A DNA stretch of 63,695 bases, filler included, from Octopus bimaculoides (GCF_001194135.2; 5 parts of 4 records of this genome joined end to end with filler, not necessarily neighbours in it), one strand, 5' to 3'; shown: positions 4,365-26,857, counted from the whole stretch's first letter. Notes: a model not told the origin generated them from the letters alone. A program made the numbers and translations.

Positions 4365-4436
4365 AAGTTCTTTAAATTGTGAATATTTTGGGATATTCCT
4401 ACGCCAATACTTGTGATATCATTATTACTGAGGTCT
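4365..4436 (-). CDS. LRR gene exon 6 (72 nt): DLSNNDITSIGVGISQNIHNLKN(L/F)
   Basis: ttttacAG|agacctcagt...aagaactt|GTAAGTtggatcag; 72 nt, same phase. The conserved F of the repeat is replaced by S. Confidence 0.82.
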
Positions 4437-4698
4437 CTGTAAAATAAGTAAGTTGATAAATTGTACAGAAGAGATATATTAAAATATTAAATATTCATGG
4501 GTAAGCAATTAGATGAAAGAAAACAAACAGTTAATGATAATCATGATGATGATGATGATGATGGCGTTGGGAATGATTGTGCTGCTGATGATGATGATGT
4601 CGATGATGGGGAACTAAAATGAACAAGAACAGGAATACAGAAAGAAGAAAAACATTATTTACATTTGACGGATATTTGTCCTCATCTTGTTTGTTGTT

Positions 4699-4744
4699 AA
4701 CACAACGTTTCGGCTGATATACCCTCCAGCCTTCGTCAGGTGTC
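4699..4744 (-). ncRNA. Minimal type I hammerhead ribozyme (Penelope-type)
   Basis: Minus strand: GACAC CUGACGA A GGCUG gagggUAUAU CAGCC GAAA C GUU GUGUU. Core intact, stem II 5 bp, stem I 5 bp (one G-U), stem III is the palindrome AACGUU, cleavage triplet GUU. Confidence 0.8.
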
Positions 4745-4825
4745 TTGGGGAAATTTTGAACTTGGGTTCTCATTCCTAACGATGTTATTATTATTATATT
4801 ATTATTATTATTACTATTATTAATC

Positions 4826-4897
4826 AGGTCGCTGCCGTGAATCGAACTCGGAATCTTGGGGTTAGTAGCCCGCGCTCTTAACCACTACGTCATATGC
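4826..4897 (-). other. tRNA-derived segment (Pol III A/B-box-like) within the Penelope 3' region
   Basis: Minus strand gcatatGACGTAGTGGttaagagcgcgggCTACTAAcccc aagattccGAGTTCGATTCacggcagcgacc, followed by (AAT)n. The cloverleaf is imperfect. Confidence 0.6.
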
Positions 4898-5615
4898 TCG
4901 TGGGCAATTATGGAGTGAATTTTAGGGCTTATAAATCTATTATTTTTCTATCCTTCCTCAATACCGGTTCCCNNNNNNNNNNNNNNNNNNNNNNNNNNNN
5001 NNNNNNNNNNNNNNNNNNNNNNNNNNNNNNNNNNNNNNNNNNNNNNNNNNNNNNNNNNNNNNNNNNNNNNNNNNNNNNNNNNNNNNNNNNNNNNNNNNNN
5101 NNNNNNNNNNNNNNNNNNNNNNNNNNNNNNNNNNNNNNNNNNNNNNNNNNNNNNNNNNNNNNNNNNNNNNNNNNNNNNNNNNNNNNNNNNNNNNNNNNNN
5201 NNNNNNNNNNNNNNNNNNNNNNNNNNNNNNNNNNNNNNNNNNNNNNNNNNNNNNNNNNNNNNNNNNNNNNNNNNNNNNNNNNNNNNNNNNNNNNNNNNNN
5301 NNNNNNNNNNNNNNNNNNNNNNNNNNNNNNNNNNNNNNNNNNNNNNNNNNNNNNNNNNNNNNNNNNNNNNNNNNTTTTCTTCATAATTGGAGTAGATAGT
5401 ATGTTCTTGGGGTAGTTGTTTCTTAATAGATTGTTACTGAGCTTGATCATTTCTTCGTGGTGGGTATCACGATCGCTACTTATATTCTTTGCTCGATGTT
5501 TTAGGCACTGAGCAATTCCTCTCTTTACATTGTATGGATGGTGGGAATTGAAGTTAAGGTATCATCCAGTGAAGGTTGGCTTGCGATATACGGATGTCCT
5601 GAATCTATACTCGGT

Positions 5616-6209
5616 TGACTTTCTGTGTAGAAACTACCTACTTCAGTATAGACACTGATATATATCGACAAGAAGATGGTTTAGCTATGGGTTCGCCATT
5701 ATCACCGATAATAGCCAATATATACATGGAATACTTCGAGAATTTGGCTTTAGGATCAACACCACTAAAACCAACCCTATGGCTGCGATAGTTGATGACA
5801 CCTTTATTCTCTGGCGCCCACCAGCAAGATGTCCAAATGCTGTTAGATCATGTGAACCCAATAAATACATCCATACAGTTCATCATGGAAAAGGAACAGA
5901 ACAATCAGCTGGCATTCCTGGACGTATTAATAACACGCACCGAGTATGGATTCAGGACATCCGTATATCGCAAGCCAACCTTCACTGGACGATACCTTAA
6001 CTTCAATTCCCACCATCCATACAATGTAAAGAGAGGAATTGCTCAGTGCCTAAAACATCGAGCAAAGAATATAAGTAGCGATCGTGATACCCACCATGAA
6101 GAAATGATCAAGCTCAGTAACAATCTATTAAGAAACAACTACCCCAAGAACATACTATCTACTCCAATTATGAAGAAAAGAGAGGATGAAACCAATAAAC
6201 TATCTACAG
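5616..6209 (+). mobile_element. Penelope-like element RT region (continues into gap 6210-7120)
   Basis: Translation LTFCVETTYFSIDTDIYRQEDGLAMGSPLSPIIANIYME...WLR*VDDTFILW...LAFLDVLI...YRKPTFTGRYLNFNSHHP is typical of Penelope RT; stop and frameshift present. Confidence 0.93.
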
Positions 6210-7120
6210 NNNNNNNNNNNNNNNNNNNNNNNNNNNNNNNNNNNNNNNNNNNNNNNNNNNNNNNNNNNNNNNNNNNNNNNNNNNNNNNNNNNNNNNNNNN
6301 NNNNNNNNNNNNNNNNNNNNNNNNNNNNNNNNNNNNNNNNNNNNNNNNNNNNNNNNNNNNNNNNNNNNNNNNNNNNNNNNNNNNNNNNNNNNNNNNNNNN
6401 NNNNNNNNNNNNNNNNNNNNNNNNNNNNNNNNNNNNNNNNNNNNNNNNNNNNNNNNNNNNNNNNNNNNNNNNNNNNNNNNNNNNNNNNNNNNNNNNNNNN
6501 NNNNNNNNNNNNNNNNNNNNNNNNNNNNNNNNNNNNNNNNNNNNNNNNNNNNNNNNNNNNNNNNNNNNNNNNNNNNNNNNNNNNNNNNNNNNNNNNNNNN
6601 NNNNNNNNNNNNNNNNNNNNNNNNNNNNNNNNNNNNNNNNNNNNNNNNNNNNNNNNNNNNNNNNNNNNNNNNNNNNNNNNNNNNNNNNNNNNNNNNNNNN
6701 NNNNNNNNNNNNNNNNNNNNNNNNNNNNNNNNNNNNNNNNNNNNNNNNNNNNNNNNNNNNNNNNNNNNNNNNNNNNNNNNNNNNNNNNNNNNNNNNNNNN
6801 NNNNNNNNNNNNNNNNNNNNNNNNNNNNNNNNNNNNNNNNNNNNNNNNNNNNNNNNNNNNNNNNNNNNNNNNNNNNNNNNNNNNNNNNNNNNNNNNNNNN
6901 NNNNNNNNNNNNNNNNNNNNNNNNNNNNNNNNNNNNNNNNNNNNNNNNNNNNNNNNNNNNNNNNNNNNNNNNNNNNNNNNNNNNNNNNNNNNNNNNNNNN
7001 NNNNNNNNNNNNNNNNNNNNNNNNNNNNNNNNNNNNNNNNNNNNNNNNNNNNNNNNNNNNNNNNNNNNNNNNNNNNNNNNNNNNNNNNNNNNNNNNNNNN
7101 NNNNNNNNNNNNNNNNNNNN

Positions 7121-8162
7121 AAAGAAAAATAAATATGAAGAATGAGAAAAAAAGAAAAATTAGACGATAAAACAGAAGAAGAAGAAGAAGAAGAAGAAGA
7201 AGAAGAAGAAGAAGAAGAAGAAGAAGAAGAAGAGGACATGAAAAGAGTAAGAACATAAAGTTGGGAAGGAGGAGGACAAAAGAATAACAATAAGAAAAAA
7301 GAAAAGGAAAATTAGAAGGCAAGTCTATAACTATAGATAATGTAGTTAGACATATACAGAAAGACATAGTGATATATATGCATATACAAATATAAACTGT
7401 ATAAACTAGATAACACACTGACGTACTCACATACACACATTAAAAACACACACATTCTCACATAAAAATATAGAGACAGTTAGAAAAGGCGATAGAAACA
7501 ATAAAAGGAATGGAAAAACATTAACTCTTTAGAAATAGGTCAAAGAAAGATAAACAAGACTGATCTAACTCACAAATACTCTAATTTGGTAAGAATTTGG
7601 AAGGATCCTTCGTCAATATTTTCGATATTGTTATATTTCAGATCTCTGTAACATATAAATGAATTGATAACTAATGGTATAGAACAAATTTGCGGTGGTA
7701 AAATATTAAATATTATGGCTAAGCAATTACATGAAATAGAGAAGTAGCAGAAGCCACTACTGCTCGTGTTGATGGTAATGATGACGACAATAACAATGAT
7801 GATGGTTTTGATGTTGATGATGATAATGATGAAGAGGATGAGGAGGAGGAGGAGGAGGAAGAAGAGGAGGGCGATTATGATGAAGATATTTAAGATGATG
7901 ATTATAGTGGTGGAGATGATGAAGATAATGATGAACGATTATATCAATGTATATGATGATTCAGATGATAATAATGATAATAAAGAAGGTAATGGAGACG
8001 AAAAGAGTACTAATGTTGATGATGGTGATGATTATATTAATGGTGATGGCAATGTTAACGATGAAGGTGATGGAGATAATAACGGCACAGGCGGTGATTA
8101 TGAGGATGTTCATGATGTGGTGGTGGTTATCATGATGGTGATGATGATGGTGCTGCTGCTAC

Positions 8163-8226
<64 letters not shown>

Positions 8227-8469: not shown

Positions 8470-8500
<31 letters not shown>

Positions 8501-8868: not shown

Positions 8869-11800
8869 ATGGAGGTGTGCATGTCATCTTCGTTGTCTTC
8901 TGATGCGGATGATTCTAAGGGGAAATCTTCGGCATTTTGTTGCATGCATGTGATTAAGACTCACGGAAGAGTTCTCCCATTTCCAGAGAAAAGTTTCAAT
9001 AAGTTCAAGGAGTGTGCTACATTGTGGAAAGAATTCAAAAATTGTCCGGAAAGTGTCATTGCGGATAAAGCAGAACGGCTTGCTGAATTCAACGATGTGT
9101 GCAAAACAAACATGGAACTGGAAGGCATATGCATATAGCATATGCATATAGCATATGCATATAGCATATGCATATAGCATATGCATATAGCATATGCATA
9201 TAGCATATGCATATAGCATATGCATATAGCATATGCATATAGCATATGCCTATAGTACCGAGATCGGCAATAGAAAGTGGGTCAACCAAATTCAGTCGTA
9301 CAATTGGTCAGTACTAATCCTTGATAATGTTTTATTTATTCCGAGATTTCTTTTAAGACTTAGAGCTCTACCTATTTAGCTAAAGATGAAAATGAGCGGA
9401 AATAATACAAATACTATACTGTCACTAGGTCTATGTAGATCCAAGACAGGATCAGGGCCTGGCTGGCATGACATGGCTAAACTGGGTTTTTTTCTGATTT
9501 CTCACAATAGTCTAGACCTCTAGATGCATCTACATTATTCTACAAGTTATATATTAGTTGCTCACTCCAAGTGTAATTTTAGACCTTCTTTAGCAAATTA
9601 AGTTCACCAAAATGAGTGAGCCATCAAGATAATGTAATTTGAAATGTACAGTAGCTAAGTTTCTAGATCTACTAAAATGATTCATTAGTCATGGCATGGT
9701 TGAGGTGGCCTCAAGGTGAACAAAGTTAAAGCTAGACTCTGACATCATTCTTGACTGATTACCTATCAAGTATCCTTCATGTCATAATGAGGGGGAGGGG
9801 CATGTGGGCAAAATCTTAAATACTGAAAGGCCACATAGGCCCAGCCCTATGGCTATGTACATGTTATAGTCTTGTACGTATATGATATATGTCTTGAACG
9901 TACATGTTATTTCAAAGTTTAAGTGATCTTTTTGCATTTCATTGGTGTATATATGTAGTAAAATTTTCAATTTTTCATGCATACAGGTTTCCAGCTGATG
10001 GTGGTAGTAGCACAGTTACTGTTAAATAATTAATTTCTTTCTTTCTTCTGCTTAGAAAATGACAGGGTAGGGCAGGGTACCATGTAGACTGCTACCGGCA
10101 TTTCTGTAGCATGACTATCATCAGGCGAGCACAAGACAAGGTAAAGAAAGCACAGATTTCAACAGGTTTGTTATGTGTAAGCCATCTTTGTATATTATAC
10201 AGATGCTGCCATTTAATTTGGTGACTTTTAATAGTTTTGATACATTAAATCTTGCCATATTTTTATGATATTTTTTTTAATGATGGTAATACGAACATTG
10301 CAGCTTGGACAGCTATGACAGTTGTTTAACAAAGTAATTGTAACTAGTGTTCATGTAGTGCAGTTTGTGCTAGTTAACAATGGGGGAAGAATTCTTTGGA
10401 TACTGATTAAGGAGAATAACAAGATTGGAGCGGTCCTCAATTAGGATACAATCATTCCAGAATCAATTACACTATTCAAGGTATTTGCTGGGAAATGTCA
10501 AATGTTTCTCACTTGTCATACAATTGCTATCAGAAATCACTGTCACAATAGAATTTAACATGTAGCTTTGTGTCACCTCAATTTCTATCATGGTTATACA
10601 TTAATTCAAAACTGATAAACAGATGTGCATGCTTGTTTCTCTTCAAGCAAGCAAAGTCAAAACAAATCCTTCAAGCCTTGATGTACACTCTGGTGCATAT
10701 ATACATTGGTATTTGTGAGGATTTTTGACAGGTGCCAATCATGTCACTGTCCTTTAAAGGGTATAACTTATATAGTATACATTAAATAACATTCTGTGAT
10801 TCTGCTTTATATTGAGGCAAAGATTTGTACTTTTTTCTATCTTTGCAGAACTTGAAGATTTAGCAGCTAAAAACTTGCAGGAGGCATCAGTGTCACAAGA
10901 GGAGACAGAGCCAAAGTGTCTTCTATGGTCAGATATCAGCAGCACTTCCTGTCCAGACAGACCGCATGTCCTACCCATTGAATGCATAATTTGTAAGACC
11001 ACTAAGTATGTAAGAGAAAGCTATTCTAGAAAAAGAAAAAATGAAAGGCTTATCAGATGTGAAACATAGGGGTGCAACTTCTAAAGACAGCTGAAATCTG
11101 TAATGAGCATTTGCTCCTTGATATCAGAGGGAAAGATCTTGTAGCACTTGGAGCTAGGTATCATCATTCATGTAGAGTTGTGAGACCCAAGAAGAGGATG
11201 ATGAAGGTTGGAAGCAGTATGAGGCTGCATTTGTTACATTCTGCAAAAGTATAATAGAAAGGAGGATAATACAGGGGCAGGAAATCCTTTACCTGACTAA
11301 GCTCTTGAAGCTTTTCATTAAGAAAGTGAAAGATGTAGAAGAATTTGAAGCAGCCAGCTACAAAAGCTCCAACCTTAAGGGGAGACTGGAGCAGTCCTAT
11401 CCAGCCCTGTGTTTCATCAGACCATCCCAGAAGTATGAAAGCGAAATTGTATTCATAGAAAACGTTGGTGTGGAGGATGTCATTCAATCAGCTGTAACTG
11501 AAATCTCCAGTGAGAAGAATCCTAGTCAAAGTGATGCGAATGTACATGCTACAAACGAAGTTCATACAGAAGAGCATACTTTAAGAACTTTATATGCTGC
11601 AGCACAAATCATTAAGTATTGCCTGAATGATGTAAACATGAAGACAACATGGCCTACAACATCTGATGACCTTATTCCTTCAGAGCTTTTCAATTTTCTT
11701 GCCTGAATGTTACAGGCCAATGAAGATCTTAAAGAGAAAGTCACAATTTCTGCTGATGAAGAACGGAAAGTTCTGTCCATAGCACAGGACATTGTGTACC

Positions 11801-14800
11801 TGAAAACTAAAGGTAGATGTGTTTTACCAAAGCATAATATACTGGGAATGTCTGTGAAGCGTCTAACAGGGTCAGCAAAACTAATTGGCATCTTGAATGG
11901 GCTTGGCCACAGTGCGTCAACATCCATTGTACTTGCACATGATACTTCTCTTGCTAAGCATCAGCTTACCTTGGGTAATCGGATACTTCCTCCTGGAGTT
12001 CAGCACATCTTCACCACTCTCATTTACAACGATAATGACTTTGGCAAGGATACTGTCTGCAAGAAGGGTACCACACATAATACCAATGGCATCATTATTC
12101 AGTACCTCACTAGCCAAGCAGAGCATAAGCCTCCCAAGATCGCTATTCCAAAGGAAAATAGCATTTGAAATTCCTCCAGTGGAGCTCAAAACGTACTATG
12201 GACGTACTATGGACGTACTATGGATGCAAGAAGATTGTACCTCAACAATTCAGCAAATTCAGCCTTAAGTGTAACGAACACCAAGATGCACAAATAAGTG
12301 CACGGGATATTGATGTTGCATGCAGCCTGCTGAAGACAGTGGAGATTGATGAGAAATTACTCCCAGGATGGACAGGAATGAATGTAATACTGAGTAAACC
12401 TATTCCAAAGCAGTCTACAGTCCACTACTTGCCAATCATCGATACCAGTCCTACAGAATTCGACACTGTGAACACAATCCTTGCAAATGCCATGTCAACA
12501 GCTGATACACTCCAGCAAGAAACAGTTGTAGTTTTGACCAGACCATTTATTCAAAAGCTCAGCAGATACAATGGGTTAATGAACTTTATTGAAAGAGGAT
12601 TGTCATTCACTTGGGTGCATTTCACACCATCCTATCTATGTTTGCATGTCTTGGGAAACGGTTTGAAGATGCAGGTTTTGAGAACATCATGATAGAGTCA
12701 AACATCATAGTACAAGGTTCAATTAACAGTGTTCTCAGTGGACACCACTACAATCACAGCATAAGTGCATTGTGGAAGCAATGGGCTCCCTCCCAGATGT
12801 GGACTACACATTGACATATGAAACCCTTGCTAAGCTTCATGCTGATTTTCCCTCTTCCTCTTTCAGTTTGTAAAGGGAAAAGAATTTCAGGCTGTGGCAC
12901 ATCTTCCTGTCATTCTTTTGTGGAACAACATTCAGCCAAAGAGCCAACGTATACTCTGATCAAGCTACACTGAGATGGTTGATGTCATCCTCTTATTTCT
13001 ATGCGCTACAAGGCAAGGAGACTCGAAATTACACCTTTCTTGTATTCTCAGTTTCCTACCTTGGGTCTTCGCCAATTATGCCAGATATCTTCTAGTTTAT
13101 TGGCATGAGATGAGTCAACTACCTGACAGTCATCCACACATTCATTTAAGGGAAGTTTGCTGTCCACCGCCAGACAGACCACAGATTCTGCGGAGTTGCT
13201 TGTGATCAGACAATAGAGCAGACATGCAACAGGGACACGAAAACAAAAGGTGGCATGATTGGATTGACAAGGAACAAAGGTGCAGTTGCCCATTGGATTT
13301 TTCCCAACATGAGTGAAGTGCTACCAGCAAACATTGTGATGAGAGAGCTGGAAGATGGCAAATCCACACAAAAAAAGATCTTAATGTGGCCAACATGGAA
13401 AAATATGAAGAGGATATCTGTAGAGTTGTTGAATCAGTAGAGGCCATGATCAATCCCTTCCCAGAAAATACCGACAGATTCGTGCACATTGCATCAGGAA
13501 TGATAACTTCCTCCAACTCTGTGATGACTATATTTCTGCATATGCAAATGGAGATAATGCTTCCGAGGCATTTTGTGAAGAACATTTACAAGGAGATGGA
13601 GACTTGTTCAAGGTCCTCAAAAAGCACAGCTTCAATGACCAAAGTAAAAGGGAAAGAAATTACAATAAAAGATGATCACAATTTGTTTCAGCATTTGGCT
13701 GTTATTGCTGGAGTAAGGAAACTTCATCTCCAAAACATGATGATGTATAATCATAGCCCTTTCCCACTCACCTTTGCCACAGTTGATGGTTCTTTGACCA
13801 AGACTACAAAAGCAACTCTTCTTCATTCTATTGAGTTCAGTGTAGAGCCTACTCCAGTTGTGGAAAGTATTCCATTGGGTAGTGTGTAGATTGTAGATGG
13901 AATGGCAATGCTCCAATAACCCAAAAGGTTGTGCCAGGTCCATTCAGTGAACTTTCAGAATATGTAGTCAAACAGCTTATTCACTGTGCACACACTGTCC
14001 ACAGCAATACTGTTCACTTTGCGGGAGACACCTACCGAACAGTGAGCATTAAGGCAGCAAAGCGAGGAAGACGAACTGCAAGTGGAAGCCAACTCACTAA
14101 GATCTATGGTCCAGAGCAAAAAGTGCCCAGTCAATGGAAAAAGATTTTGTCATGCAGTCAAAACAAAGGAGCCTTAATTCAGCCATTCATCAAAATGTGG
14201 CAAGAATACCCAATCTTGCTTTGTGATGTCAAAGTTGTCATTGCTCATGATGAAGAGTGTCATTTGCTGCAGAATGGAGATGGTAAAGTCAAGATACAAG
14301 TTGTGAAGGAACTTGAAATGCAACCATGAAGAAACGGACACCAGGCTGTTCTCGCATTGTCAATATGCTGCTGCATCTCTCTCTTCGGCTTCGAGCAGTA
14401 CACCAGCAATCATTATAAAGAGTCCAGACACTTATGTCTTCGTTATTGGCAGAGCAAAGGCTCATCAAATTCAGGGCTAGCTATTCTTTCACACTGGTAG
14501 AGGCAACAACAAGCGTGCACTTAATCTAACAGCTATACAAAATCATCTCAGAGACAGTCTTGCAGATGTCCTTATCAGCCTTCATTGTTTTACACGCTAT
14601 AACTCAACAAGCTGTTTCTTTGGCCGGTCTAAGAAGAAAACTTTGAAGCTCATGACTGAATTTGTTGATTTTCAAGCAGCCTTTCAACAATTTGGTGAAA
14701 CATTCTCTGTAGAAGATGGTCTGGTACACACAGTAGAGAAATTTGTTTGTAGACTGTATGATCAAGATTGTTCGAGTGTCAATACAGCGCCGTATAACAA

Positions 14801-15199
14801 GTTCTTGATGAGCACTAAAGCAGAGATGCACATGCCTCCCACACATGATACCATGGTGAAATACCTGATGAGAACAAACTACCAAGCAGGAGTACATACA
14901 GATGTTTTGAACAGTTTCCCAGTATCCCCAGCCCACACAACCATGGATGGAAGGTAACAGAGGTATTGTGGGGTGATCTTCCACCTGCATCAAGTGCTCT
15001 GCTTGAACTTACTTATTGAAGTTGCAAGATGAATAGCTGTGAGGAACCCAAAGGTGAAGGAAAGGTTCAGTGCTCGTGTCAACAGCACAAAGTAATCTGC
15101 ACAGATCTGTGTAGATGCATTCATTGCCAAATTTTAGCTCAAACAGGAAATGAAGTAGAAGGTGATGAAGATGATACAGACAAGGAGGAAGAAGACTAG
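8869..15199 (+). pseudogene. Academ transposase pseudogene (transposase core + XPG/PIN-like nuclease + Cys-rich tail)
   Basis: Motifs across frames: GYHVDCY, ARYHHSC, LNGLGHSAS, KKGTTHNTNGIIIQ, LPGWTGMN, YLPIIDTSPT, MGAFH, NYARY, GGMIGLTRN, HEETDTR (14325), SPDTYV, HCFTRYNSTSCFFGRSKK, MPPT. It ends SCKMNSCEEPKGEGKVQCSCQQHKVICTDLCRCIHCQILA + acidic tail + TAG (15197-15199). Many stops and frameshifts. Confidence 0.85.
9125..9254. repeat. 13-bp minisatellite (GCATATGCATATA) x10
   Basis: Nine perfect units and one with a single mismatch, counted directly. Confidence 0.97.
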
Positions 15200-15801: not shown

Positions 15802-15846
<45 letters not shown>

Positions 15847-16561
15847 NNNNNNNNNNNNNNNNNNNNNNNNNNNNNNNNNNNNNNNNNNNNNNNNNNNNNN
15901 NNNNNNNNNNNNNNNNNNNNNNNNNNNNNNNNNNNNNNNNNNNNNNNNNNNNNNNNNNNNNNNNNNNNNNNNNNNNNNNNNNNNNNNNNNNNNNNNNNNN
16001 NNNNNNNNNNNNNNNNNNNNNNNNNNNNNNNNNNNNNNNNNNNNNNNNNNNNNNNNNNNNNNNNNNNNNNNNNNNNNNNNNNNNNNNNNNNNNNNNNNNN
16101 NNNNNNNNNNNNNNNNNNNNNNNNNNNNNNNNNNNNNNNNNNNNNNNNNNNNNNNNNNNNNNNNNNNNNNNNNNNNNNNNNNNNNNNNNNNNNNNNNNNN
16201 NNNNNNNNNNNNNNNNNNNNNNNNNNNNNNNNNNNNNNNNNNNNNNNNNNNNNNNNNNNNNNNNNNNNNNNNNNNNNNNNNNNNNNNNNNNNNNNNNNNN
16301 NNNNNNNNNNNNNNNNNNNNNNNNNNNNNNNNNNNNNNNNNNNNNNNNNNNNNNNNNNNNNNNNNNNNNNNNNNNNNNNNNNNNNNNNNNNNNNNNNNNN
16401 NNNNNNNNNNNNAATCCTATTTATTCTGAAATCAGATTTGATGCAACATTCTGTACGTCATAATCTTTCCTTCACAATAAAAAAGCAGTCTAATACACAC
16501 GCCATTGGCCTCGTTTCCAATTTTGGAATCAAGAGGGTGACAGACATAATTATGAAATATT

Positions 16562-19500
16562 AATCATCATCATCATCATCATCATCGTTTAACGTCCGCT
16601 TTCCATGCTAGCATGGGTTGGACGATTTGACTGAGGACTGGCGAACTGGATAGCTGCACCAGGCTCCAATCTGATCTGGCAGAGTTTCTACAGCTGTATG
16701 CCCTTCCTAACGCCAACCACTCTGAGAGTGTAGTGGATGCTTTTACGTGCCACCAGCACGAAGACCGGTCTCGCGGTACTGGCAACGGCCACGCTCAAAA
16801 AGGTGTTTTTACATGACACCTGCACTGAAGCCAGTCCAGTGGCATTGGCAACAACCTCGCTCGAATGTTTTCTAACGTGCCACTGGCACAAGTGCCAGTA
16901 AGGCGACGCTGGTGACGATCACGCTCAAATGGTGCTATTTACGTGCCACTGGCACGGAAGCCAGACAGCTGATCTGGCAATGACCACTTCAGGACGGTGC
17001 TGTTAGTGCTCCACTGGCGCAGGTACCAGTCAACGAATTTGGTTCAATTACGATTTCGATTTCACTTGCCCTTCGATCTTCGCAAGCAGAGTTTAGTGTC
17101 CAATGAAGTAAAGATACGAATAAGTGAGCTGGTTACACTTCTGGCAGAGGCCACAGATTATGGTCTCACTTGGCTTGTCGGGCTGTCTTACGCACAGCAT
17201 ATTTCCAAAGTTCCCGGTCACTAGTCATTGCCTCGGTGAGGCCTAATGTACAAAGGTCTTGCTTCACCACCTCATCTCAGATCTTCCTGGGTGTACCTCT
17301 TCCACAGGTTCCCTCAATCACTAGGGTGTTCCACTTTTTCACACAGCTATCCTCATCCATTCTTGCCACATGACCATACCAGCGCAATTGTCTCTTTTGC
17401 ACACCACAACTGATGCTTCTTAGGTCCAACTTTTCTCTCAAGGTACTTACACTCTGTCGAGTATGCACACTGACATCACACATCCATCGGAGCATACTGA
17501 CTTAAGTTTCTTGCGAGCTTAATCATGTCCTCAGCAGTCACGGCCCATGTTTCATTGCCATGTAGCATGGCTGTTCGTATACATGCGTCATACAGTCTGC
17601 CTTTTACTCTGAGTGAGAGGCCCTTTGTCACTAGCAGAGGTAAGAGCTCTGTGAACTTGCCCAGGCAATTCTTATTATAGCAGCTACACTTTCAGCGCAC
17701 ACTCTCCCGCTACTAACTTGGTCACCTAGTTGTTGGCACTCCGTCGCTTATGACGTCGAGGGTTCCAGTTGATCCAATCAACGGAACAGCCTGCTCGTGA
17801 AATTAACGTGCAAGTGGCTGAGCACTCCACAGACACGTGTACCCTTAACGTAGTTCTCGGGGGAGATTCAGCGTGACACAGTGTGACAAGGCTGGCCCTT
17901 TGAAATACAGGTACAACAGAAACNNNNNNNNNNNNNNNNNNNNNNNNNNNNNNNNNNNNNNNNNNNNNNNNNNNNNNNNNNNNNNNNNNNNNNNNNNNNN
18001 NNNNNNNNNNNNNNNNNNNNNNNNNNNNNNNNNNNNNNNNNNNNNNNNNNNNNNNNNNNNNNNNNNNNNNNNNNNNNNNNNNNNNNNNNNNNNNNNNNNN
18101 NNNNNNNNNNNNNNNNNNNNNNNNNNNNNNNNNNNNNNNNNNNNNNNNNNNNNNNNNNNNNNNNNNNNNTGGAATGTGGCAAAGGTTGCTTTCTGCACAT
18201 TTTCAGTGTTTATTGTTCCTGAGCATCTGCCACATACAAAAACTATCTTCCTAGTTAGCCTTCCTTTGATATTGCTGCACCTCTTATGTGTCCATAGCTT
18301 ACACTGGGTACATCTTATGGAGTTTCTAACTACGCCTTTTCTACAGATCGAGCAGGGCCATCTACCTGAAGGGGTTTGTGTTTTGTCTACCTTCCTACTT
18401 ATTAGGACTTTGGTTTTAGTTAGGTTGGTTCTTAGGCCCTTCGATTCTGGTCCTTGCTTCCACACATGAAACTTCTCCTCTAGTTCTGGTAGTGACTCAG
18501 CAATTAGGGCAAGGTTATCAGCATAGACGAGCTCCCAAGGGCATCCTGTTTTGAATTCCTGTGTTATTGCCTGGAGGACTATGATAAATAGGAAGGGGCT
18601 GAGGACTGAACCTTGGTAGACCCCTACCTTTATCCGGAATTCTTCACTGTGCTCGTTGCCAACCCTCACCTTACTGACAGCGTACCTGTACATGGCTTGC
18701 ACAGCTCTCACTTACCATTCATCTATCCCTAGTTTTCTCATTGACCACCAGATAAGGGATCGGGAGACCCTGTCAAAGCCAGGTACAGAGGTTTATCTTT
18801 GGCTAGGTATATCTCCTGCAGCTATCTTACTAGAAATATAGCACCAGTGGTGCTTTTCCCTGGCATGAACCTAAACTGCATCTAATCTAAACTGACTCTC
18901 TCCCTAATTAGTTGGGCTATGACCCTCTCCGTGACTTTATTACCTGATCCAACAACTTGATACCTCTGTAATTATTTGTATCTAAAGCGTCACTTTTACC
19001 TTTGTAGCAGCTGACTACGGTGCTGCTACACCAGTCATTGGGTATGACTCTTTCGTGTATCACCTGGTTAACTATACGGGTGACTAGGCTATAGCCGACA
19101 CAGCCAGATATTTTGAGTATCTCTGCAGTAATTCCTGATGGGCCAGGGGCTTACCCTGTCTTCATACTCTTAATTGCTTTATCTACCATGGTACTGTCAA
19201 CTCGGATAGCTGGTCCTTCTGTTGGGTCGACATTCGGCAGACTCTTTTTCTCCCATTCATTCTCTTTATTGAGCAACCTTTCATAGTGCAAGTGAACCAT
19301 CATCCATGCGTACACATTTCTCTCCTACGACATCACGATTCTCTCTCACACACTGTCTTGCAACACGAAATACCTCAAGTCTTTGGTCCTCACGGCGCAG
19401 AACATCAGCAATTTTTTTTCTTATCTGCATCCCCTCTGGCTAAATAAACCTGTCTCCTAGCTTCTCTTCTGGCAGTCTGATACAATTCCCTGCTACCACC

Positions 19501-20283
19501 GTTCTTCCAAGTCTGTTTCTTTTCTCTAATAGCCCTGTCAACAATATTGTTCCACCACCACGTTATTTTGGGTCAAGGGGACTTTGCACCATCCACAGAT
19601 CTGGTCAGTGACTCTCAGCAGGTTTTCCCGTAGAAACCTCCAGTTGTCTTCTACATTGTGTGAAGCTATATCCCCTTCTATTTCGTCAAAGGCTTCGAGT
19701 AATAAGTCTCTAAATCTCTNNNNNNNNNNNNNNNNNNNNNNNNNNNNNNNNNNNNNNNNNNNNNNNNNNNNNNNNNNNNNNNNNATAAGCAGCCATTTTC
19801 CCCCCTTTTCTGGCGAGGATGTAGTCAATGTGGCTAGTGTGTCTGCCAGAACGGTAGGTGACAAGGTGACTGGCAGGTTTCCTGAAGTTAGTATTGCAAA
19901 CCATAAGGTCATTTGCATCGCAGAACTCCAGCAGCCTGGTTCCCTTCTCATTGCGGGAACAAAAACTATAGCCTCCATGTATGCCATGGAAGCCCCCTGT
20001 ATGTTGTCCAACATGTCCATTGAAGTCACTAGCCACAAAGAGAAGGTCCCTGTCATTCGTCAACGAGGTAGTCTGCAAGAGGGTGTCATAAAATCGGTCT
20101 TTCTGTCCATCGGGTAGCCCCGGTTGAGGGACATAGGCCAAAATAATGGTTGCTAACCCATGATGTAGCACTAATCTAATATTAAGTATTCTATCGCATA
20201 CTCTGACTACCTCGATTACTTTATCCACCCATTTCTCCGCAAGAAGTATACCCACGCCCCGACCCAGTCTGTGTTCCTTGCCC
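16562..20283 (-). mobile_element. RTE-clade LINE, 5'-truncated, with APE endonuclease, RT, PHD-like finger and (GAT)n tail
   Basis: APE: GVGILLAEKWVDKV...AYVP...SDFNGHVG...NEKGTRLLEFC...HIDYIL (19710-20285). RT: QGSVLSPFLFII...YADNLAL (18170-18711). C-terminus MLRWMC...QLRWYGHVARM...GRGTPRK, then a trinucleotide tail at 16562-16586. Confidence 0.93.
17731..17922 (-). mobile_element. tRNA-derived SINE (family B, 3' part) inserted in the RTE
   Basis: Near-identical reverse complement of 50140-50331 and similar to 38195-38390; it interrupts the RTE C-terminal coding region. Confidence 0.8.
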
Positions 20284-20468
20284 AATGTGCACTTTTCATG
20301 CTTGACAAGTTTGTGTGGTTGTTAGTCATATTTTTCTCTACCGTTGTGCAAAATTTCATGTAGCTTCCACGTGTTGGTCACAAAAATAAAAACCTATAGC
20401 AATTTTAGATGTCTGCATCCCAGCCTAAATAAGGAAAGGAAAAGGAAAGTATAAGAAGAAAAAGTAAA

Positions 20469-22637: not shown

Positions 22638-23665
22638 TGAACGAGGAGATTCTGTTTTCCCACTTTGACAGAATTACATCAGTCTTCAACTTTGCAACTG
22701 GCAAAAGGAAAAGAAAAAAAAAAAAGAAAAAAGCATATTTAGTCGAACAGTTTTGTATAAATGTGAGAAATTCACCTGTCATTTTATTCCTTCCTTCAGG
22801 AAGTGATGTCAGCAACTCACAAACATATCTCTCTTCATGCATTTTGAAGACTGAAAGTGTAATAGATTCAGAATATTTTCTGAGAATGAGCACTCTCAGG
22901 TGTTCTTCAAAATTGCAGACGCTTGATGTAAAATGTTCAGCAAGTTCTACAGAACTACTGCCATTGAGTCTCACGTCATGCCTGTGCCCATTGAATCTTT
23001 GGTTTAATTGTTGTACAGCCAACATAAATTAAGTCGGGTTTGGTGCATTCTGCTGTGTACACCAAATAGGAATCTTTACCCTCCCACCTTCTGTATAACT
23101 CATAACATTTCTGTTATGATTCCTGATAGAACTGATTTGACTTGTTGTTGCACAATGAATGGGGTTTACCTCTCTTGCAGCTGCTTTTCAAGGCATGGCA
23201 TTCAGAAACTCCAATGTTAGTTTTCTTGGAGTCAGAAGTAGAGGTTAATATTTCTCTTATATTCTTATTCCATCTAAAGGCTACAATAGGCAGCTGAAGG
23301 AATATTTGTTTGAAGCGAGGCGACTTTTTTGCAATATGCTGGTAACTATAATATATAACACTCTTCAAATGCCAGCGAAATTTCTGAGCCAGTTAACCAC
23401 CAAAGGAATTGCATCACATATTTCACTTTCTTTTCTAAAATTATACGTTGAAGTTTTACTTTCTTTGCTAATTTTAGCTATGTCATTTAGCTATTCCTTT
23501 TATTATGGTTTACTGTAACCGCATTTGACACAACGTGTGCAAAAGCATTTGCAATATTCCAGTAATCCCCTGTTATCAGTACAAATCCTAAAAACTTTGG
23601 ATTTCAGATTTGACCGAATTAAAAAATGTAGATGGTCAGAGCAGTGGTGGAGGTAAATGTGAGAT
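22592..23665 (-). mobile_element. Penelope-like element fragment (RT thumb + GIY-YIG endonuclease + 3' hammerhead-like motif)
   Basis: YLHHCSDH...LKSKVFRICTD (RT thumb); VYTAECTKPDLIYVGCT...QLNQRFNGHRHD...LAEHF...ERYVCELLTSLPEGRN (GIY-YIG). Confidence 0.8.
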
Positions 23666-24076
23666 GACATAGGCAAAATCCTGAAGATAGTGAATATGAG
23701 GTAGAGGGTGTAGAGGAAGAGAAATATGAATAATGTAGTCCTAAATGTATAAATAGAAATGAGACTTGCGGTTTTTGTCAATCACCATTGATCAAGATCT
23801 GAGGCACAGTAAATGATTTGCAGGCAGAATTACGTACACAAGCTGATAGATTCGTATATAATCACACATACACACAAACATACATATGCACTTCAAAGAA
23901 ATCATACAGACACTATCACATTGTCATACACATCCACATAAACATTCGTACACATTTACACACGTGGAGGAAAAGTTAGAGAGATAAAGAAAAAGAAGAA
24001 ATGAAGATTGGAAGACATTAAATATTTTAAAATATAACAGCAGCGAAAGAGTATCAACAAGATTGATCCAACTTAC

Positions 24077-24148
24077 AATTTTATTAAACTAGGAAGATTT
24101 TGGAAGGTTCGCTCTCCAATACGTGAGATTTCATTATTCTCCAGGTAT
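24077..24148 (-). CDS. LRR gene exon 4 (72 nt): YLENNEISRIGERTFQNLPSLIKL
   Basis: ttttatgttAG|atacctggag...ataaaatt|GTAAGTtggatcaa; 72 nt, same phase, LRR consensus. Confidence 0.88.
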
Positions 24149-25075
24149 CTAACATAAAAATGAGTCAATAGAAAATCTTGTATAGAACAGATCCATGATA
24201 ATAGATAAATTATTAAGGTTAAATATTTAAATGAACGAAGCAAAGAAGTAGTAGAAGATGAAGGCTAGAAGTACAAGAAGGGAAAGAGGAAGAATGAGAA
24301 GCAGAAGTATAAGGGAAAAGTAAAAGGAGAAGAATAAAGGAAAATATATAACAGAAAAGAAAGGGAGTGAAGAAGCAAGGGGGAAATAAGTTAATGAATA
24401 AGAACAAAAACATAAAAAGAAGAATTTTATGTTGATAATAGGGATGGTAAAGAAATGAAGTCATAAAAGCTGTAGAGGCAAAGAAGAAGCGGAATACGAA
24501 GGGGAAAAGAAAGAAGCAGAATTCGAAGAAAGAATAGACAAAAAGGAAAAGATGGAGTTGGAGGAAGAGAAAATGAAGAAACAGAAGAGAAGAGAAAAAG
24601 AAGTGAAGAACAAGAAGGGTGTGGAGAAATAGAATGAAAACAAGAAAGCAGTGACAAAGGAGAAAGGGGACAGAAATACAAATATTTATTCCATTAGGTG
24701 TGAGGGTCATGGTTTGCAATTAGTATTGACCTAGCATTAAAAAACTTACTGAAATAATTATTGTATACACATGCTGATATATTCGAATATATTCATACAT
24801 ACATACAAACATATATATGAATATTCTCACGCATAATTATACACATGCAAAGATCCACAGACAATGACATGGAGACACTCACTTTCATACAACCTCACAT
24901 TCGCTTACACTAACATTCATGCACTTACATGTAAGTTCATTCACACTTACCTTCACAAACATGAAGAAGTATAGAAAAGAGTTGGAAACAAATGGGGAGA
25001 AAAAGAAGGATGGGAAGAAATTATTTAGAAATATCACGTCAACAAAAGAGTATCAACAAAACTGATCCAACTTAC

Positions 25076-25147
25076 AAATTCTCTAAATAGGTAAGATTTT
25101 GGAAGGTTCCATTTTCAATAGTCTTGATTTTATTATAGCCCAGATAT
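25076..25147 (-). CDS. LRR gene exon 3 (72 nt): YLGYNKIKTIENGTFQNLTYLENL
   Basis: tgttatAG|atatctgggc...gagaattt|GTAAGTtggatcag. The peptide is visible at the end of ORF 25072..25299(-). Confidence 0.9.
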
Positions 25148-26083
25148 CTATAACATAAGGAAGTTGATAAGCAATACAGAACATATTTGCGATAAAATAT
25201 TATGGCTAAACAATTAGATAAAAGAAAAGAAGTAGAAGATAATGATGATGATGATTGTGAGGGTAATGACGATGATGTTGATGTTGAGAAAGATGACAAT
25301 GGCAGGTTGAGGGCTATGATAATGAATGATGGTGATCACAGTGATGATGATGATCATCATCATCATCACCATGACAACAATGAAGAGACAATGATGAGGA
25401 TGATGAAGGTAATAATGATGACGGTGGTGGTGGTGATAATGATGATGGTAATTGGGATGCTGGTGATGATTTTCACAGTGATGTTGACAATAATAAATTT
25501 CACTATGATGAGGAGGATAAATGTTGAAAAGATTGTAATAATGATGATGGTGGGGGTCTGCAGATAATGACAGTACTGATGAAGATGATGTTATATAAGG
25601 AGAAGATGATGTTATATAAGGAGAAGATGAAAATAATGTTATATGAGAAGATGAAGATGATGCTATAAGAAGAAGAAAAAAAGAAGAGTAATAAAATCAG
25701 CAAGAAAATAAAGATGAAAAACAAAAAAGAAGAGAAGTTGAAAATGAAGCAGAATAGAAAGAAGAGGAGAATGGAAGAAAGATAAGGAAATGGAGAAAAG
25801 GAAATGGAATATTGGGAAAAAAGAAATAGAAGATGAACACAAGAATAATATATAAATATAATGTAATCACGTATACACACAAGAACACCAACAAACATGC
25901 ATATACACCCACACGAAAGACATAAAATGACACACACAGCAGCACAGTAACATTCATACGCATTCAATTACATTCACACACAAATATGGAGAAAATGTTG
26001 TTGAGAAGTTAAAGGATGGGATAACATTAAATAGTTAGGAATATAACGTCAATGGAAATGTGTCAATGAGAGGTCGAACTTAC

Positions 26084-26155
26084 ATATATTTTACATTGGG
26101 AAAATTTTGGAAGGTTCTTTCTTCAATATCCGAGATTTCATTAAAACCCAGATAT
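26084..26155 (-). CDS. LRR gene exon 2 (72 nt): YLGFNEISDIEERTFQNFPNVKYI
   Basis: tgttatAG|atatctgggt...aaatatat|GTAAGTtcgacc; 72 nt, same phase, LRR consensus. Confidence 0.88.
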
Positions 26156-26785
26156 CTATAACATAAAAATGAGTTGATAAGAAATTGTACAGAATAGAAG
26201 TGAAAAAATATTAATATCATAGCTAAAGAATTAGATAAAGGAAGAGAAGAAACAGTAGTTGTGGGTGATGATGTTAATGGTTATCAAAAAGAAGAATAGA
26301 AGAAAGAGAAGAAAGAAAAGAAGAAGAACAACAACAGCAATAACAACAACTAACAAAGAGTTGAATAAGAAATACAATGAGAAGAGGAAAAAGAAGAAAA
26401 GGAAGCAAATAGAAGTAGAAAAATGAACATGAATGAAATGAAAGGTAGCCCTAAATAGAACTAAAACACAATTATCTGCAGACAGAATTGTACATGCAAA
26501 TTCAAACACACATAAATTCACACACAAACACACGACACATATTTATGCATAAACAGAAACTTATAAACACTATCACATACTTATACGCACCCACACATGC
26601 ATTCACAAACGTGTTTTTATTCACAACATTCACACACACACTCCCACATACATTCTCAGTCATACTCTCACACACATATCGAGAAAAAGTGAGAGTGACA
26701 AACTGAAAAGAAATGACGAGAAGACATTCAAAATTTAGAAATATATCATCAATGAAAGAGTATCAAGAAGACTGATCCAACTTAC

Positions 26786-26857
26786 AATCTTTCTAATCTG
26801 GAGAGGTTTTGGAAATGTTTTTCTTCAATATTCTGTAATTTATTATAGGCCAGATAT
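26786..26857 (-). CDS. LRR gene exon 1 of 6 visible (72 nt): YLAYNKLQNIEEKHFQNLSRLERL
   Basis: Minus strand reads tgttacAG|atatctggcc...gaaagatt|GTAAGTtggatcag. Exactly 72 nt, open in the frame starting at exon nt 2, matching the typical 24-aa LRR pattern xLxxNxIxxIxxxxFxxLxxLxxL. Confidence 0.88.

What the first reader, a model, noticed from the sequence alone, without database searches (positions are those of the whole stretch)
4365..26857. Hidden array of six interchangeable 72-nt LRR exons: candidate combinatorial (splice-diversified) LRR receptor
Seen: six exons absent from the ORF track, each exactly 72 nt with the same phase (start with A, end with TT/AT). They splice into YLAYNKLQNIEEKHFQNLSRLERL-YLGFNEISDIEERTFQNFPNVKYI-YLGYNKIKTIENGTFQNLTYLENL-YLENNEISRIGERTFQNLPSLIKL-DLKYNNIENIDEGSFQILTKLEYL-DLSNNDITSIGVGISQNIHNLKN. 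Any subset can be joined in frame. Each junction splits the ligand-facing LxxL|xLxxN beta-strand, so skipping an exon would make a new hybrid binding strand rather than just a shorter solenoid. Established: 72-nt same-phase LRR exons are normal in LGR/RXFP/GRL101-type receptors and other LRR ectodomains, so symmetry alone does not prove alternative splicing. Inference: recent exon multiplication with near-identical splice contexts is the architecture expected for a Dscam/VLR-like diversified receptor. The host gene family cannot be named because no N-terminal or transmembrane exon is visible.
Basis: partly seen in the sequence, partly recalled or inferred. Interest (0 to 1): 0.8.

Follow-up and report, generated by a model that had tools for sequence, protein, structure and literature searches.

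The report
Octopus receptor gene's modular LRR exons
Six small exons, each encoding one leucine-rich repeat, are real and belong to an unannotated gene of an octopus-specific receptor family; relatives have predicted isoforms that mix such exons, but nothing shows mixing at this locus.

Summary
Six 72-nt exons lie on the minus strand. Each has a canonical AG...GT(A/G)AGT boundary and the same phase, and together they read as six 24-residue LRRs (Pfam LRR_8, E = 1.9e-48). No assembly gap cuts an exon; all five gaps are in introns.

The host family can now be named provisionally. A one-repeat profile built from the six exons ranks octopus proteins first among 1.84 billion. The closest is O. bimaculoides LOC106882527 (LRRs, GPS, 7tm_2, Death domain). 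The roughly 60 nt of intron on each side of the exons is homologous to the flanks of that gene's fifteen 72-nt LRR exons.

The splice-diversification idea is partly supported, by relatives only. One O. sinensis relative has 13 NCBI model isoforms of 409, 385, 361 and 337 aa. A second has 525, 501 and 477 aa. The differences are whole LRR exons. Three of the 13 carry chimeric repeats, so haplotype or paralogue mapping is a live alternative to splicing.

The window's exons are old duplicates (51-76% nt identity), not recent ones. I found no Dscam-like intron pairing. Modular 72-nt phase-2 LRR exons with alternative splicing are already described in gonadotropin receptors, NLRP3 and brown-algal ROCO genes. 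Verdict: a new member of a known kind, of moderate interest.

The parts
26786..26857 (-). LRR exon E1 (72 nt, phase 2/2): (L)YLAYNKLQNIEEKHFQNLSRLER(L)
   Evidence: acceptor ...ttacag|A, donor TT|gtaagt
26084..26155 (-). LRR exon E2: YLGFNEISDIEERTFQNFPNVKY(I)
   Evidence: acceptor ...ttatag|A, donor AT|gtaagt
25076..25147 (-). LRR exon E3: YLGYNKIKTIENGTFQNLTYLEN(L). Best single match is 17 of 24 residues with LOC106882527 exon YLEHNKIKTIENGAFQNLVNLRRL.
24077..24148 (-). LRR exon E4: YLENNEISRIGERTFQNLPSLIK(L)
   Evidence: acceptor ...tgttag|A, donor TT|gtaagt
7574..7645 (-). LRR exon E5: DLKYNNIENIDEGSFQILTKLEY(L). Separated from E4 by a 16.4-kb intron full of transposable elements, with three gaps.
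   Evidence: donor TT|gtgagt
4365..4436 (-). LRR exon E6: DLSNNDITSIGVGISQNIHNLKN(L). It ends in phase 2, so a further exon is required downstream, outside the piece.
26858..26927 (-). Example of the conserved 5' intron flank (about 60-70 nt before each exon; consensus ...ATCTGTTCTGTACAATTTCTTATCAACTCATTTTTATGTTACAG). CTTAT is a likely branch point. The same element lies upstream of E2-E6.
   Evidence: 75-76% mean pairwise identity; flank-only profile hits only next to LRR exons in octopus loci
26716..26785 (-). Example of the conserved 3' intron flank (consensus GTAAGTTGGATCAGTCTTGTTGATACTCTTTCATTGATGATATATTTCTAAATATTTAATG). The same element lies downstream of E2-E6.
   Evidence: (82% at +1..+30, 74% at +31..+60)

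Best explanation
The window holds the middle of the ectodomain-coding region of an unannotated gene from an octopus genome, or one very close to octopus. Each 24-residue leucine-rich repeat is a separate 72-nt, phase-2 exon. Each exon sits in a roughly 200-nt conserved unit: about 60 nt of intron carrying a probable branch point and pyrimidine tract, then the exon, then about 60 nt of intron beginning GTAAGTTGGATCAG.

The gene belongs to the octopus-expanded family whose full-length members are adhesion GPCRs. Their layout is LRRNT, up to about 17 LRRs, a CGCHLP-type LRR C-terminal cap, a Cys-rich module, GPS, 7tm_2 and sometimes a Death domain. Other gene models in the family have LRRs only.

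By default the six exons, plus at least one more on each side, are joined into a curved LRR solenoid that forms the ligand-binding surface.

Shown: the exons, their phase, the LRR identity, the flank conservation and the homology to the family's loci.

Inferred: membership of the adhesion-GPCR branch rather than an LRR-only branch. Also inferred is that the conserved flanks exist to secure or regulate recognition of very short exons in long, transposon-filled introns. They may permit in-frame skipping of single repeats, as NCBI models annotate for relatives.
For: Exons and phase. LRR identity.

Functional constraint: scaffold codons have pN 0.11 against 0.41 at variable codons. All six reading frames and all twelve splice sites are intact.

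Family: a 24-position profile of the six repeats, searched against 1.84e9 proteins, gives only 768 hits. Its four strongest hits (E below 1e-30) are octopus proteins. The best pairwise match is 46% over 142 ungapped residues to O. bimaculoides LOC106882527, which has LRR_8, GPS, 7tm_2 and Death domains.

That gene has fifteen 72-nt phase-2 LRR exons with the same flank motifs. The window's unit profile hits the units of that locus at E = 1e-39 to 1e-16, including the flanks. Flank-only profiles give 9 and 5 hits, all abutting LRR exons. Flank identity between window and L002 is 0.62-0.65, against 0.36 for random intron controls.

The window's repeats match transposable elements of the O. bimaculoides locus at 87-94%.

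Literature: an octopus-specific adhesion-GPCR expansion with LRRs in 5 of 22 members and one Death domain, expressed in axial nerve cord, suckers and skin (PMC6408891).
Against: No LRRNT, LRR C-terminal cap, GPS or 7TM exon lies in the window, so the receptor class is inferred from paralogues.

Protein identity to the octopus family (42-46%) is barely above identity to unrelated LRR proteins of Mytilus and Branchiostoma (43-44%). The assignment therefore rests on the repeat-profile ranking and on intron-flank homology.

No orthologue or product of this locus was found in the protein collections. Transcription is unproven.
Confidence: 0.7

Rival explanations
1. The array is a splice-diversified receptor module. 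Subsets of the six exons are included combinatorially, giving many ectodomain isoforms from one gene.
For: All exons are phase-symmetric, and the junction codon is always Leu or Ile. Intron flanks are more conserved than synonymous sites (18-26% divergence against pS 0.40) and are conserved across paralogous genes. That pattern is typical of regulated exons.

In one O. sinensis relative, 13 NCBI isoforms use different subsets of the first cassette exons: ABC, BC, BJ, B, A, J, none, and one that skips a downstream exon. A second gene shows 525, 501 and 477 aa forms. Two intact LRR exons in L001 are used by none of the 13.

In that relative, concave-face codons are hypervariable (65% nt identity) while the introns are 97-99% identical.
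Against: There are no expression data for this locus. The isoforms are computational XP_ models. Three of the 13 carry chimeric repeats (d/b, d/f) that whole-exon splicing cannot produce, and the reference 'd' exon is 73 nt. LOC106882527, the closest relative, is listed without an isoform label. All six donors are GTAAGT or GTGAGT with good pyrimidine tracts, as in constitutive exons. The same flanks occur next to both the variably and the constantly included exons of L001.
Confidence: 0.3
2. The isoform diversity in the relatives is not splicing. It reflects copy-number or haplotype variation produced by unequal crossing-over between near-identical exon-intron units, or transcripts of unassembled paralogues mapped onto one reference.
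For: In L001 the introns of same-type units are 93-99% identical over 100-150 nt, which is an ideal substrate for unequal exchange and for mis-mapping. The chimeric LRRs I, K and L combine the 5' half of exon d with the 3' half of b, f or another exon. The switch point, AAAGAAG|GT, is one where a GT-AG 'intron' can be drawn between homologous positions. The locus is an unplaced 52.7-kb contig.
Against: At least eight isoforms are clean whole-exon combinations bounded by canonical sites. A second gene on a 28.9-Mb scaffold shows the same 24-aa steps.
Confidence: 0.3
3. The host gene is a rhodopsin-class LRR receptor (LGR, RXFP or GRL101 type), or another classical LRR gene such as Slit or LRIG.
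For: 72-nt phase-2 LRR exons are the classical gonadotropin-receptor layout (PMC11378527 citing Koo 1991). PDB sequence matches include LRIG1 (3.7e-57) and LGR4/5 (1e-34 to 1e-39), along with many other LRR proteins.
Against: These PDB matches are generic to LRRs: TLR3, IGFALS and LRRTM score equally. No hit that was checked is an LGR: of the 17 top hits looked up, 10 are octopus proteins (adhesion-GPCR or LRR-only models), 4 are unrelated Mytilus or Branchiostoma LRR proteins, and 3 are unnamed. Intron flanks are homologous to adhesion-GPCR family loci.
Confidence: 0.05
4. The array is a dead remnant, a pseudogenised fragment of a duplicated LRR gene.
For: No annotated product was found. The E4-E5 intron is 16.4 kb and packed with retroelements. 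Overall dN/dS is about 0.7.
Against: There are six open frames out of six and twelve intact splice sites out of twelve. The LRR scaffold positions are strongly conserved (86% nt, 77% aa), while the other positions vary.
Confidence: 0.07

Closest known systems
Octopus-specific LRR-bearing adhesion GPCR expansion ('group 3' of Ritschard et al. 2019, PMC6408891), e.g. O. bimaculoides LOC106882527 / XP_052821851.1
   Same: Same 24-residue repeat consensus (xLxxNxIxxIExGxFQNLxxLxxL). One repeat per 72-nt phase-2 exon. Homologous intron flanks on both sides of the exons. Same transposable-element families in the introns.
   Different: Only 46% identical over six repeats, and no one-to-one correspondence of repeats except E3-E4 with two adjacent exons, so it is a paralogue. 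The defining GPS and 7tm_2 parts are not in the window. The published description does not mention exon structure or splicing.
O. sinensis LRR gene on contig VCDQ01004985.1 (XP_036355612-23, annotated 'slit homolog 1-like' isoforms X1-X13)
   Same: 72-nt phase-2 LRR exons, and a 3' flank beginning GTAAGTTCGTTCAGTTTCTTGATA..., related to the window's.
   Different: Its units are very recent two-exon (A/B) duplicates. Their introns are 93-99% identical, and hypervariability is confined to concave-face codons. The window's units are old and diverged throughout. Isoforms are annotated there and none here.
Brown-algal LRR-ROCO genes (Zambounis 2012; Teng 2024, PMC11378527)
   Same: Each LRR is a 72-bp phase-2 exon. 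They show tandem exon duplication, diversifying selection on LRR positions and several transcripts with different LRR combinations.
   Different: Cytoplasmic GTPases of a different kingdom, so this is convergent architecture. Nothing on flank conservation in them was checked here.
Glycoprotein-hormone/LGR receptors and human NLRs (NLRP3 exon 5 skipping; PMC6642158)
   Same: Strict exonic modularity of LRRs and frame-preserving exons. Skipping a single LRR exon yields a shorter but folded solenoid.
   Different: Different receptor classes. Those genes have one or a few splice variants, not a combinatorial set, and their LRR exons are not recent tandem paralogues with shared intron flanks.
Dscam1 mutually exclusive exon clusters and lamprey VLR cassette assembly
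   Same: Tandem arrays of interchangeable modules that encode a binding surface.
   Different: Dscam chooses exactly one exon per cluster through docking-selector RNA pairing; no such pairing is detectable here. VLR cassettes are joined somatically at the DNA level and lack splice sites; here every unit has canonical splice sites.

Membership tests
Octopus LRR / adhesion-GPCR expansion (LOC106882527-like) | Typical 24-residue LRRs matching the family's repeat consensus better than other LRR proteins do | tested here: met
   The one-repeat profile ranks octopus proteins first among 1.84e9. Pairwise identity alone (46% against 43-44% for Mytilus and Branchiostoma) is weak.
Octopus LRR / adhesion-GPCR expansion (LOC106882527-like) | One LRR per 72-nt phase-2 exon | tested here: met
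   Window: 6 of 6. L002: 15 exons. L001: 11 exons.
Octopus LRR / adhesion-GPCR expansion (LOC106882527-like) | Shared intron-flank sequence around LRR exons (evidence of common descent of the exon units) | tested here: met
   Unit profile hits in L002 at E = 1e-39 to 1e-16, and in L003. Flank-only profiles: 14 hits, all abutting LRR exons. Identity 0.62-0.65 against a control of 0.36.
Octopus LRR / adhesion-GPCR expansion (LOC106882527-like) | CGCHLP-type LRR C-terminal cap plus Cys-rich module | tested here: inconclusive
   tblastn of eight family proteins finds no such exon in the window. E6 ends in phase 2, so the gene continues beyond the piece.
Octopus LRR / adhesion-GPCR expansion (LOC106882527-like) | GPS motif and 7tm_2 domain | not testable with these tools
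   Not in the window, and the genomic neighbourhood of the window could not be retrieved.
LGR / RXFP / GRL101 receptors | 72-75-nt same-phase LRR exons | tested here: met
   The phase-2 layout is described for gonadotropin receptors.
LGR / RXFP / GRL101 receptors | Closest relatives are LGR-type proteins; 7tm_1 and (type C) LDLa modules | tested here: not met
   Of the 17 top profile hits looked up, 10 are octopus adhesion-GPCR or LRR-only models, 4 are unrelated Mytilus or Branchiostoma LRR proteins, 3 are unnamed, and none is an LGR. No 7tm_1 or LDLa exon is in the window.
Dscam-type mutually exclusive exon cluster | Docking/selector complementary intron elements | tested here: not met
   RNAalifold finds only a 6-bp AU-rich helix, -2.2 kcal/mol, with no helix-wide compensatory support. 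In L002 one arm changes (TATGAAC) while the other stays GTTGATA. Duplex energies of -13.0 match shuffles at -12.1 +/- 4.3.
Dscam-type mutually exclusive exon cluster | Exactly one exon of the cluster per mRNA | tested here: not met
   Annotated isoforms of the relative include 0-3 cassette exons. Not testable for the window itself.
VLR-type somatic LRR cassette assembly | Cassettes without splice signals, joined by DNA copy-choice | tested here: not met
   Every unit has a pyrimidine tract with AG, and a GTAAGT or GTGAGT donor.
Modular LRR-exon genes with alternative splicing (brown-algal ROCO, NLRP3) | Frame-preserving single-LRR exons | tested here: met
   definitions.
Modular LRR-exon genes with alternative splicing (brown-algal ROCO, NLRP3) | Several transcripts with different LRR-exon combinations | not testable with these tools
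   No RNA data for the window. Relatives have model isoforms in 24-aa steps.
Modular LRR-exon genes with alternative splicing (brown-algal ROCO, NLRP3) | Diversifying selection on solvent-exposed LRR positions | tested here: inconclusive
   Window: pooled dN/dS about 0.7, with concave and convex codons equally diverged. Relative L001: concave codons 65% identical against 95-100% elsewhere and 97-99% in introns.

The most novel reading that the evidence does not exclude
Octopuses have evolved a lineage-specific family of LRR-adhesion GPCRs and LRR-only relatives. In this family, arrays of 72-nt phase-2 LRR exons carry a conserved intronic 'cassette' signature. The exons are combined by alternative splicing, and reshuffled by unequal exchange, while the concave-face codons evolve under diversifying selection. 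The result would be a cell-surface recognition repertoire parallel to the octopus protocadherin expansion or to invertebrate immune diversification. The window would be a previously unannotated member of it.
Probability: 0.25. Interest if true: 0.8.

Novelty: new member of a known kind. Interest (0 to 1): 0.5.

Why it matters
Octopus-specific adhesion GPCRs are expressed in the axial nerve cord, suckers and skin. They have been proposed to complement the expanded protocadherins (PMC6408891).

If their LRR ectodomains are diversified by exon choice, with hypervariable concave-face residues, that would be a new example of receptor diversification in a large-brained invertebrate. It could be tested directly with long-read cDNA.

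Even without splicing, two patterns are measurable signatures of selection on both the binding surface and the splicing signals. First, intron flanks are as conserved as, or more conserved than, the coding repeats. Second, in the O. sinensis relative, near-identical introns flank exons whose concave-face codons are hypervariable.

For annotation, the locus is an unannotated multi-exon gene that ORF-based tracks miss.

Tried and rejected
1. Intron-bridging or exon-looping RNA pairing between the upstream TATCAAC and the downstream GTTGATA. RNAalifold picked the helix, but its energy is -2.2 kcal/mol with no helix-wide compensatory support. The paralogous locus changes one arm only. Duplex energies equal those of shuffles. 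Rejected.

2. Direct search of the spliced 143-aa peptide in the 5.8e9-protein index found only three weak hits at 29-37% identity. I got round this with an alignment of window-exact exon translations.

3. A profile of six-repeat windows from family members returned only short, mostly metagenomic LRR proteins and nothing closer. A search with P0007 gave many octopus family members but none closer than 46%.

4. tblastn of family proteins for LRRNT, LRR C-terminal cap or 7TM exons in the window found nothing. The apparent LRRNT match upstream of E5 is the conserved intron flank read in frame.

5. P0007's locus could not be fetched.

6. The first Pfam call failed on coordinates. Seven ORFs of the 10.8-15.2 kb block tested on the plus strand have no Pfam hit.

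7. The LGR literature search was used only for context. The starfish relaxin-receptor paper states LGR intron phases only for introns in or just after the transmembrane region. LGR5 exon 5 is 216 bp, not 72.

Full report
**1. The observation**

Their coordinates are:
- E1 26786-26857
- E2 26084-26155
- E3 25076-25147
- E4 24077-24148
- E5 7574-7645
- E6 4365-4436

Each exon is exactly 72 nt. Each follows a T-rich tract ending in AG and precedes GTAAGT (GTGAGT for E5). Each begins with A, which completes a TT|A or AT|A codon, and ends with two bases of a codon. That is intron phase 2 on both sides. Any subset therefore joins in frame, and the junction residue is always Leu or Ile.

The joined 432 nt is open in one frame only and scores Pfam LRR_8 at E = 1.9e-48. 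A mechanical scan for AG-72nt-GT exons with an LRR motif finds these six on the minus strand. It also finds one plus-strand match (23320-23391) that no other test supports. A profile of the exon with 150 nt on each side finds exactly six copies (E = 1e-82 to 1e-86) and nothing else with an exon. So the feature is real and far beyond chance.

**2. The assembly gaps**

No exon touches a gap; all five gaps are intronic.
- Gaps 17924-18169 and 19720-19784 lie inside a minus-strand LINE. Its RVT_1/PHD and endonuclease ORFs read across them.
- Gap 15847-16412 follows a (TG)n run.
- Gap 6210-7120 cuts a reverse-transcriptase-like ORF.
- Gap 4973-5374 abuts a 241-nt, 99% inverted duplicate of that same element (5375-5615 against 5939-6179). 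This looks like an assembly artefact.

A 72-nt exon hidden in one of the three larger gaps cannot be excluded. 'Six' is therefore a minimum, and E4-E5 and E5-E6 adjacency is unproven. The frame argument does not depend on adjacency, because every exon is phase-symmetric. E1 needs an upstream exon and E6 a downstream one, so the gene runs off both ends of the piece. tblastn with eight family proteins finds no other family exon in the window.

**3. Anatomy of the repeat unit**

The exons are not recent copies. Pairwise identity is 37-55 of 72 nt, with a mean of 67%. Identity at codon positions 1, 2 and 3 is 62%, 72% and 65%. Pooled pS is 0.40 and pN 0.32. Scaffold codons (L, N, I, F) are constrained (pN 0.11) while the others vary (pN 0.41). 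That argues for a functional LRR domain rather than a pseudogene.

The introns next to the exons are more conserved than the exons themselves:

| Region | Mean pairwise identity |
|---|---|
| -60..-1 | 75-76% |
| exon | 67% |
| +1..+30 | 82% |
| +31..+60 | 74% |
| beyond about 60-90 nt | about 50% |

Intron homology beyond the flanks is limited to low-complexity tracts. The upstream element contains a CTTAT motif about 25 nt before the AG, which is a plausible branch point (inference). The downstream element, GTAAGTTGGATCAGTCTTGTTGATACTCTTTCATTGA..., extends far beyond what a donor site needs.

**4. Which gene family**

Searching the spliced peptide in the word-indexed protein collection failed. 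I therefore built a 24-column alignment of the six exon translations and searched it exhaustively against 1.84 billion representatives. Only 768 proteins reached E <= 1e-3. The four proteins that stand out (E below 1e-30) are all from Octopus: two from O. sinensis and two from O. bimaculoides. Other high-ranking hits come from O. sinensis and O. vulgaris. Lower hits include unrelated Mytilus and Branchiostoma LRR proteins.

The best pairwise match is 46% over 142 ungapped residues, in several registers. It is to O. bimaculoides LOC106882527 (P0006/P0154). That protein has about 17 LRRs, a GPS motif, a 7tm_2 domain and a C-terminal Death domain. P0175, annotated as adhesion GPCR A3, has the same layout without the Death domain. 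Shorter models (385-600 aa) end after a CGCHLP-type cap and a Cys-rich module.

This matches the octopus-specific adhesion-GPCR expansion described by Ritschard et al. 2019. They found LRRs in 5 of 22 members and a Death domain in one, with expression in axial nerve cord, suckers and skin. Their paper says nothing about splicing (PMC6408891).

Protein identity alone is not decisive. Octopus proteins reach 42-46%, and Mytilus and Branchiostoma LRR proteins reach 43-44%. I therefore fetched genomic loci. L002 (LOC106882527) contains fifteen 72-nt phase-2 LRR exons whose flanks visibly carry the window's motifs. Four results support homology:
- The window's unit profile hits 16-17 units in L002 at E = 1e-39 to 1e-16, with alignments running about 100 nt into both introns. 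It also hits 13 units in L003.
- Profiles built from the window's intron flanks alone give 9 hits (3' flank) and 5 hits (5' flank) in 216 kb of octopus loci. Every hit directly abuts an LRR exon.
- Flank identity between window and L002 units is 0.62-0.65, the same as exon identity (0.65). Random intronic 60-mers aligned the same way give 0.36.
- The window's interspersed repeats match L002 at 87-94%, one of them in at least 11 copies.

I conclude that the window comes from an octopus genome, or one very close to it. I also conclude that its LRR array is a paralogue of this family's arrays. No orthologue or product of the locus is in the collections, so it is unannotated there.

**5. Does it splice combinatorially?**

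There is no RNA evidence for the window. The relatives are informative, however. One O. sinensis gene (contig VCDQ01004985.1, L001) has 13 NCBI model isoforms of 409, 385, 361 and 337 aa. A second has 525, 501 and 477 aa. All the steps are exactly 24 aa.

Cutting the isoforms into repeats shows which first cassette exons each one uses. The sets are ABC, BC, BJ, B, A, J and none. One further isoform skips a later exon. The last five repeats are otherwise constant. These blocks map onto intact 72-nt phase-2 exons in L001. Two further intact exons (28668 and 31667) lie before the cap exon (about 38985) and are used by none of the 13.

- The isoforms are computational models.
- Three of them carry chimeric repeats. 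These join the 5' half of exon 'd' to the 3' half of b, f or another exon. The reference 'd' is 73 nt because of an A-run. Whole-exon splicing cannot make such chimeras. They point to haplotype or copy-number differences, or to paralogous transcripts mapped onto this contig.
- The closest relative, LOC106882527, is listed without an isoform label.
- All six donors in the window are strong, GTAAGT or GTGAGT.

I put splice diversification at this locus at about 0.3.

**6. A stronger signal in the relative**

Within L001 the units fall into two alternating types.

| Unit type | Intron flank identity | Exon identity |
|---|---|---|
| Type A | 97-99% over 100-150 nt | 89% |
| Type B | 93-96% | 82% |

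The exon differences sit almost entirely in the codons for x5, x7 and x8 at the 5' end and x2 and x3 at the 3' end. For type A, nucleotide identity is 0.65 at concave-face codons, 0.95 at convex-face codons and 1.00 at scaffold codons. This is the signature of diversifying selection on the concave binding face, or of gene conversion that spares those codons (inference).

That property is, however, common to all phase-2 LRR-exon genes. In the window itself, concave and convex codons are equally diverged (0.54 against 0.60), so the test is inconclusive there.

**7. Mechanisms tested and rejected**

The upstream TATCAAC and downstream GTTGATA are complementary, which suggested Dscam-like pairing. 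Three results argue against it:
- RNAalifold gives -2.2 kcal/mol with no helix-wide compensatory support.
- L002 has TATGAAC upstream but keeps GTTGATA downstream.
- Duplex energies (-13.0 kcal/mol) equal those of shuffles (-12.1 +/- 4.3).

VLR-type DNA assembly is excluded because every unit has canonical splice sites. What the conserved +7..+60 and -60..-30 intron segments bind remains unexplained. My working inference is exon definition, or regulated inclusion, of very short exons in long introns full of transposable elements.

**8. Comparison with what is known**

Single-LRR, 72-bp, phase-2 exons are the classical layout of gonadotropin receptors. They are also the layout of brown-algal LRR-ROCO genes, where exon shuffling, diversifying selection and up to nine transcripts with different LRR combinations are described (PMC11378527). 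Strict exonic modularity of LRRs as a precondition for alternative splicing has been shown for human NLRs, for example NLRP3 lacking exon 5 (PMC6642158). LGR5 also has a variant that skips an LRR exon.

The architecture and the idea are therefore known. What is new here is the host: an octopus-specific LRR/adhesion-GPCR family. For that family, neither the exon structure, nor the flank conservation, nor the isoform series appears in the papers I could search.

**9. Verdict**

- Observation: confirmed.
- Interpretation: partly supported.
- Best explanation (confidence 0.7): an unannotated paralogue of the octopus LRR/adhesion-GPCR family. Six or more modular LRR exons are joined by default into one solenoid.
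- Combinatorial exon use is plausible from relatives but untested here.
- Novelty: a new member of a known kind.
- Interest: 0.5.

Noticed in passing
window 5375-5615 and 5939-6179: A 241-nt, 99% inverted duplicate of retroelement sequence. Its left arm begins exactly at the edge of gap 4973-5374. This is probably an assembly artefact inside the E5-E6 intron.
   Followed up: partly
window 16563-17108: A short interspersed repeat with at least 11 copies (80-90% identity) in the O. bimaculoides locus L002. Smaller repeats at 4652-4753, 6054-6209 and 17771-17923 match at 92-94%.
   Followed up: partly
window 10812-15199 (+): A block of about 4.4 kb with many long plus-strand ORFs (up to 175 aa) inside the E4-E5 intron. 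The seven ORFs tested have no Pfam match. It is presumably an uncharacterised mobile element.
   Followed up: partly
window 17277-20285 (-), 2703-3179 (+), 5615-6209 (+): Retroelements in the introns: a LINE with a reverse transcriptase, a PHD finger and an endonuclease, on the gene's own strand; an LTR-type integrase (H2C2 and rve domains); and a reverse-transcriptase fragment.
   Followed up: yes
window 27840-28026 and 23675-23874: A 200-nt repeat, 80.5% identical, present in the sequence upstream of E1 and in the E4-E5 intron. It is not an LRR unit.
   Followed up: no
L001 11131-11203 (O. sinensis): LRR exon 'd' is 73 nt because of an A-run, so it shifts the frame. Even so, three NCBI isoforms contain repeats that are chimeras of d with exon b, exon f or another exon. 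This points to haplotype or paralogue differences, or to a homopolymer error in the contig.
   Followed up: partly
L001 28668-28739 and 31667-31738: Two intact, same-phase LRR exons with canonical splice sites lie between the last used LRR exon (27354) and the cap exon (about 38985). Neither occurs in any of the 13 isoforms read.
   Followed up: partly
L001 LRR units (12934...31667): The introns of same-type units are 93-99% identical, while the exons are 82-89% identical. Almost all exon differences fall in concave-face codons. This is a signature of diversifying selection, or of selective gene conversion.
   Followed up: partly
window exon-intron junctions, e.g. 26755-26800: RNAalifold also proposes an 8-bp hairpin pairing the exon's CCAxxTTA with the intron's TAAGTTGG. 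That would sequester the 5' splice site. There is no covariation, and it was not pursued.
   Followed up: no
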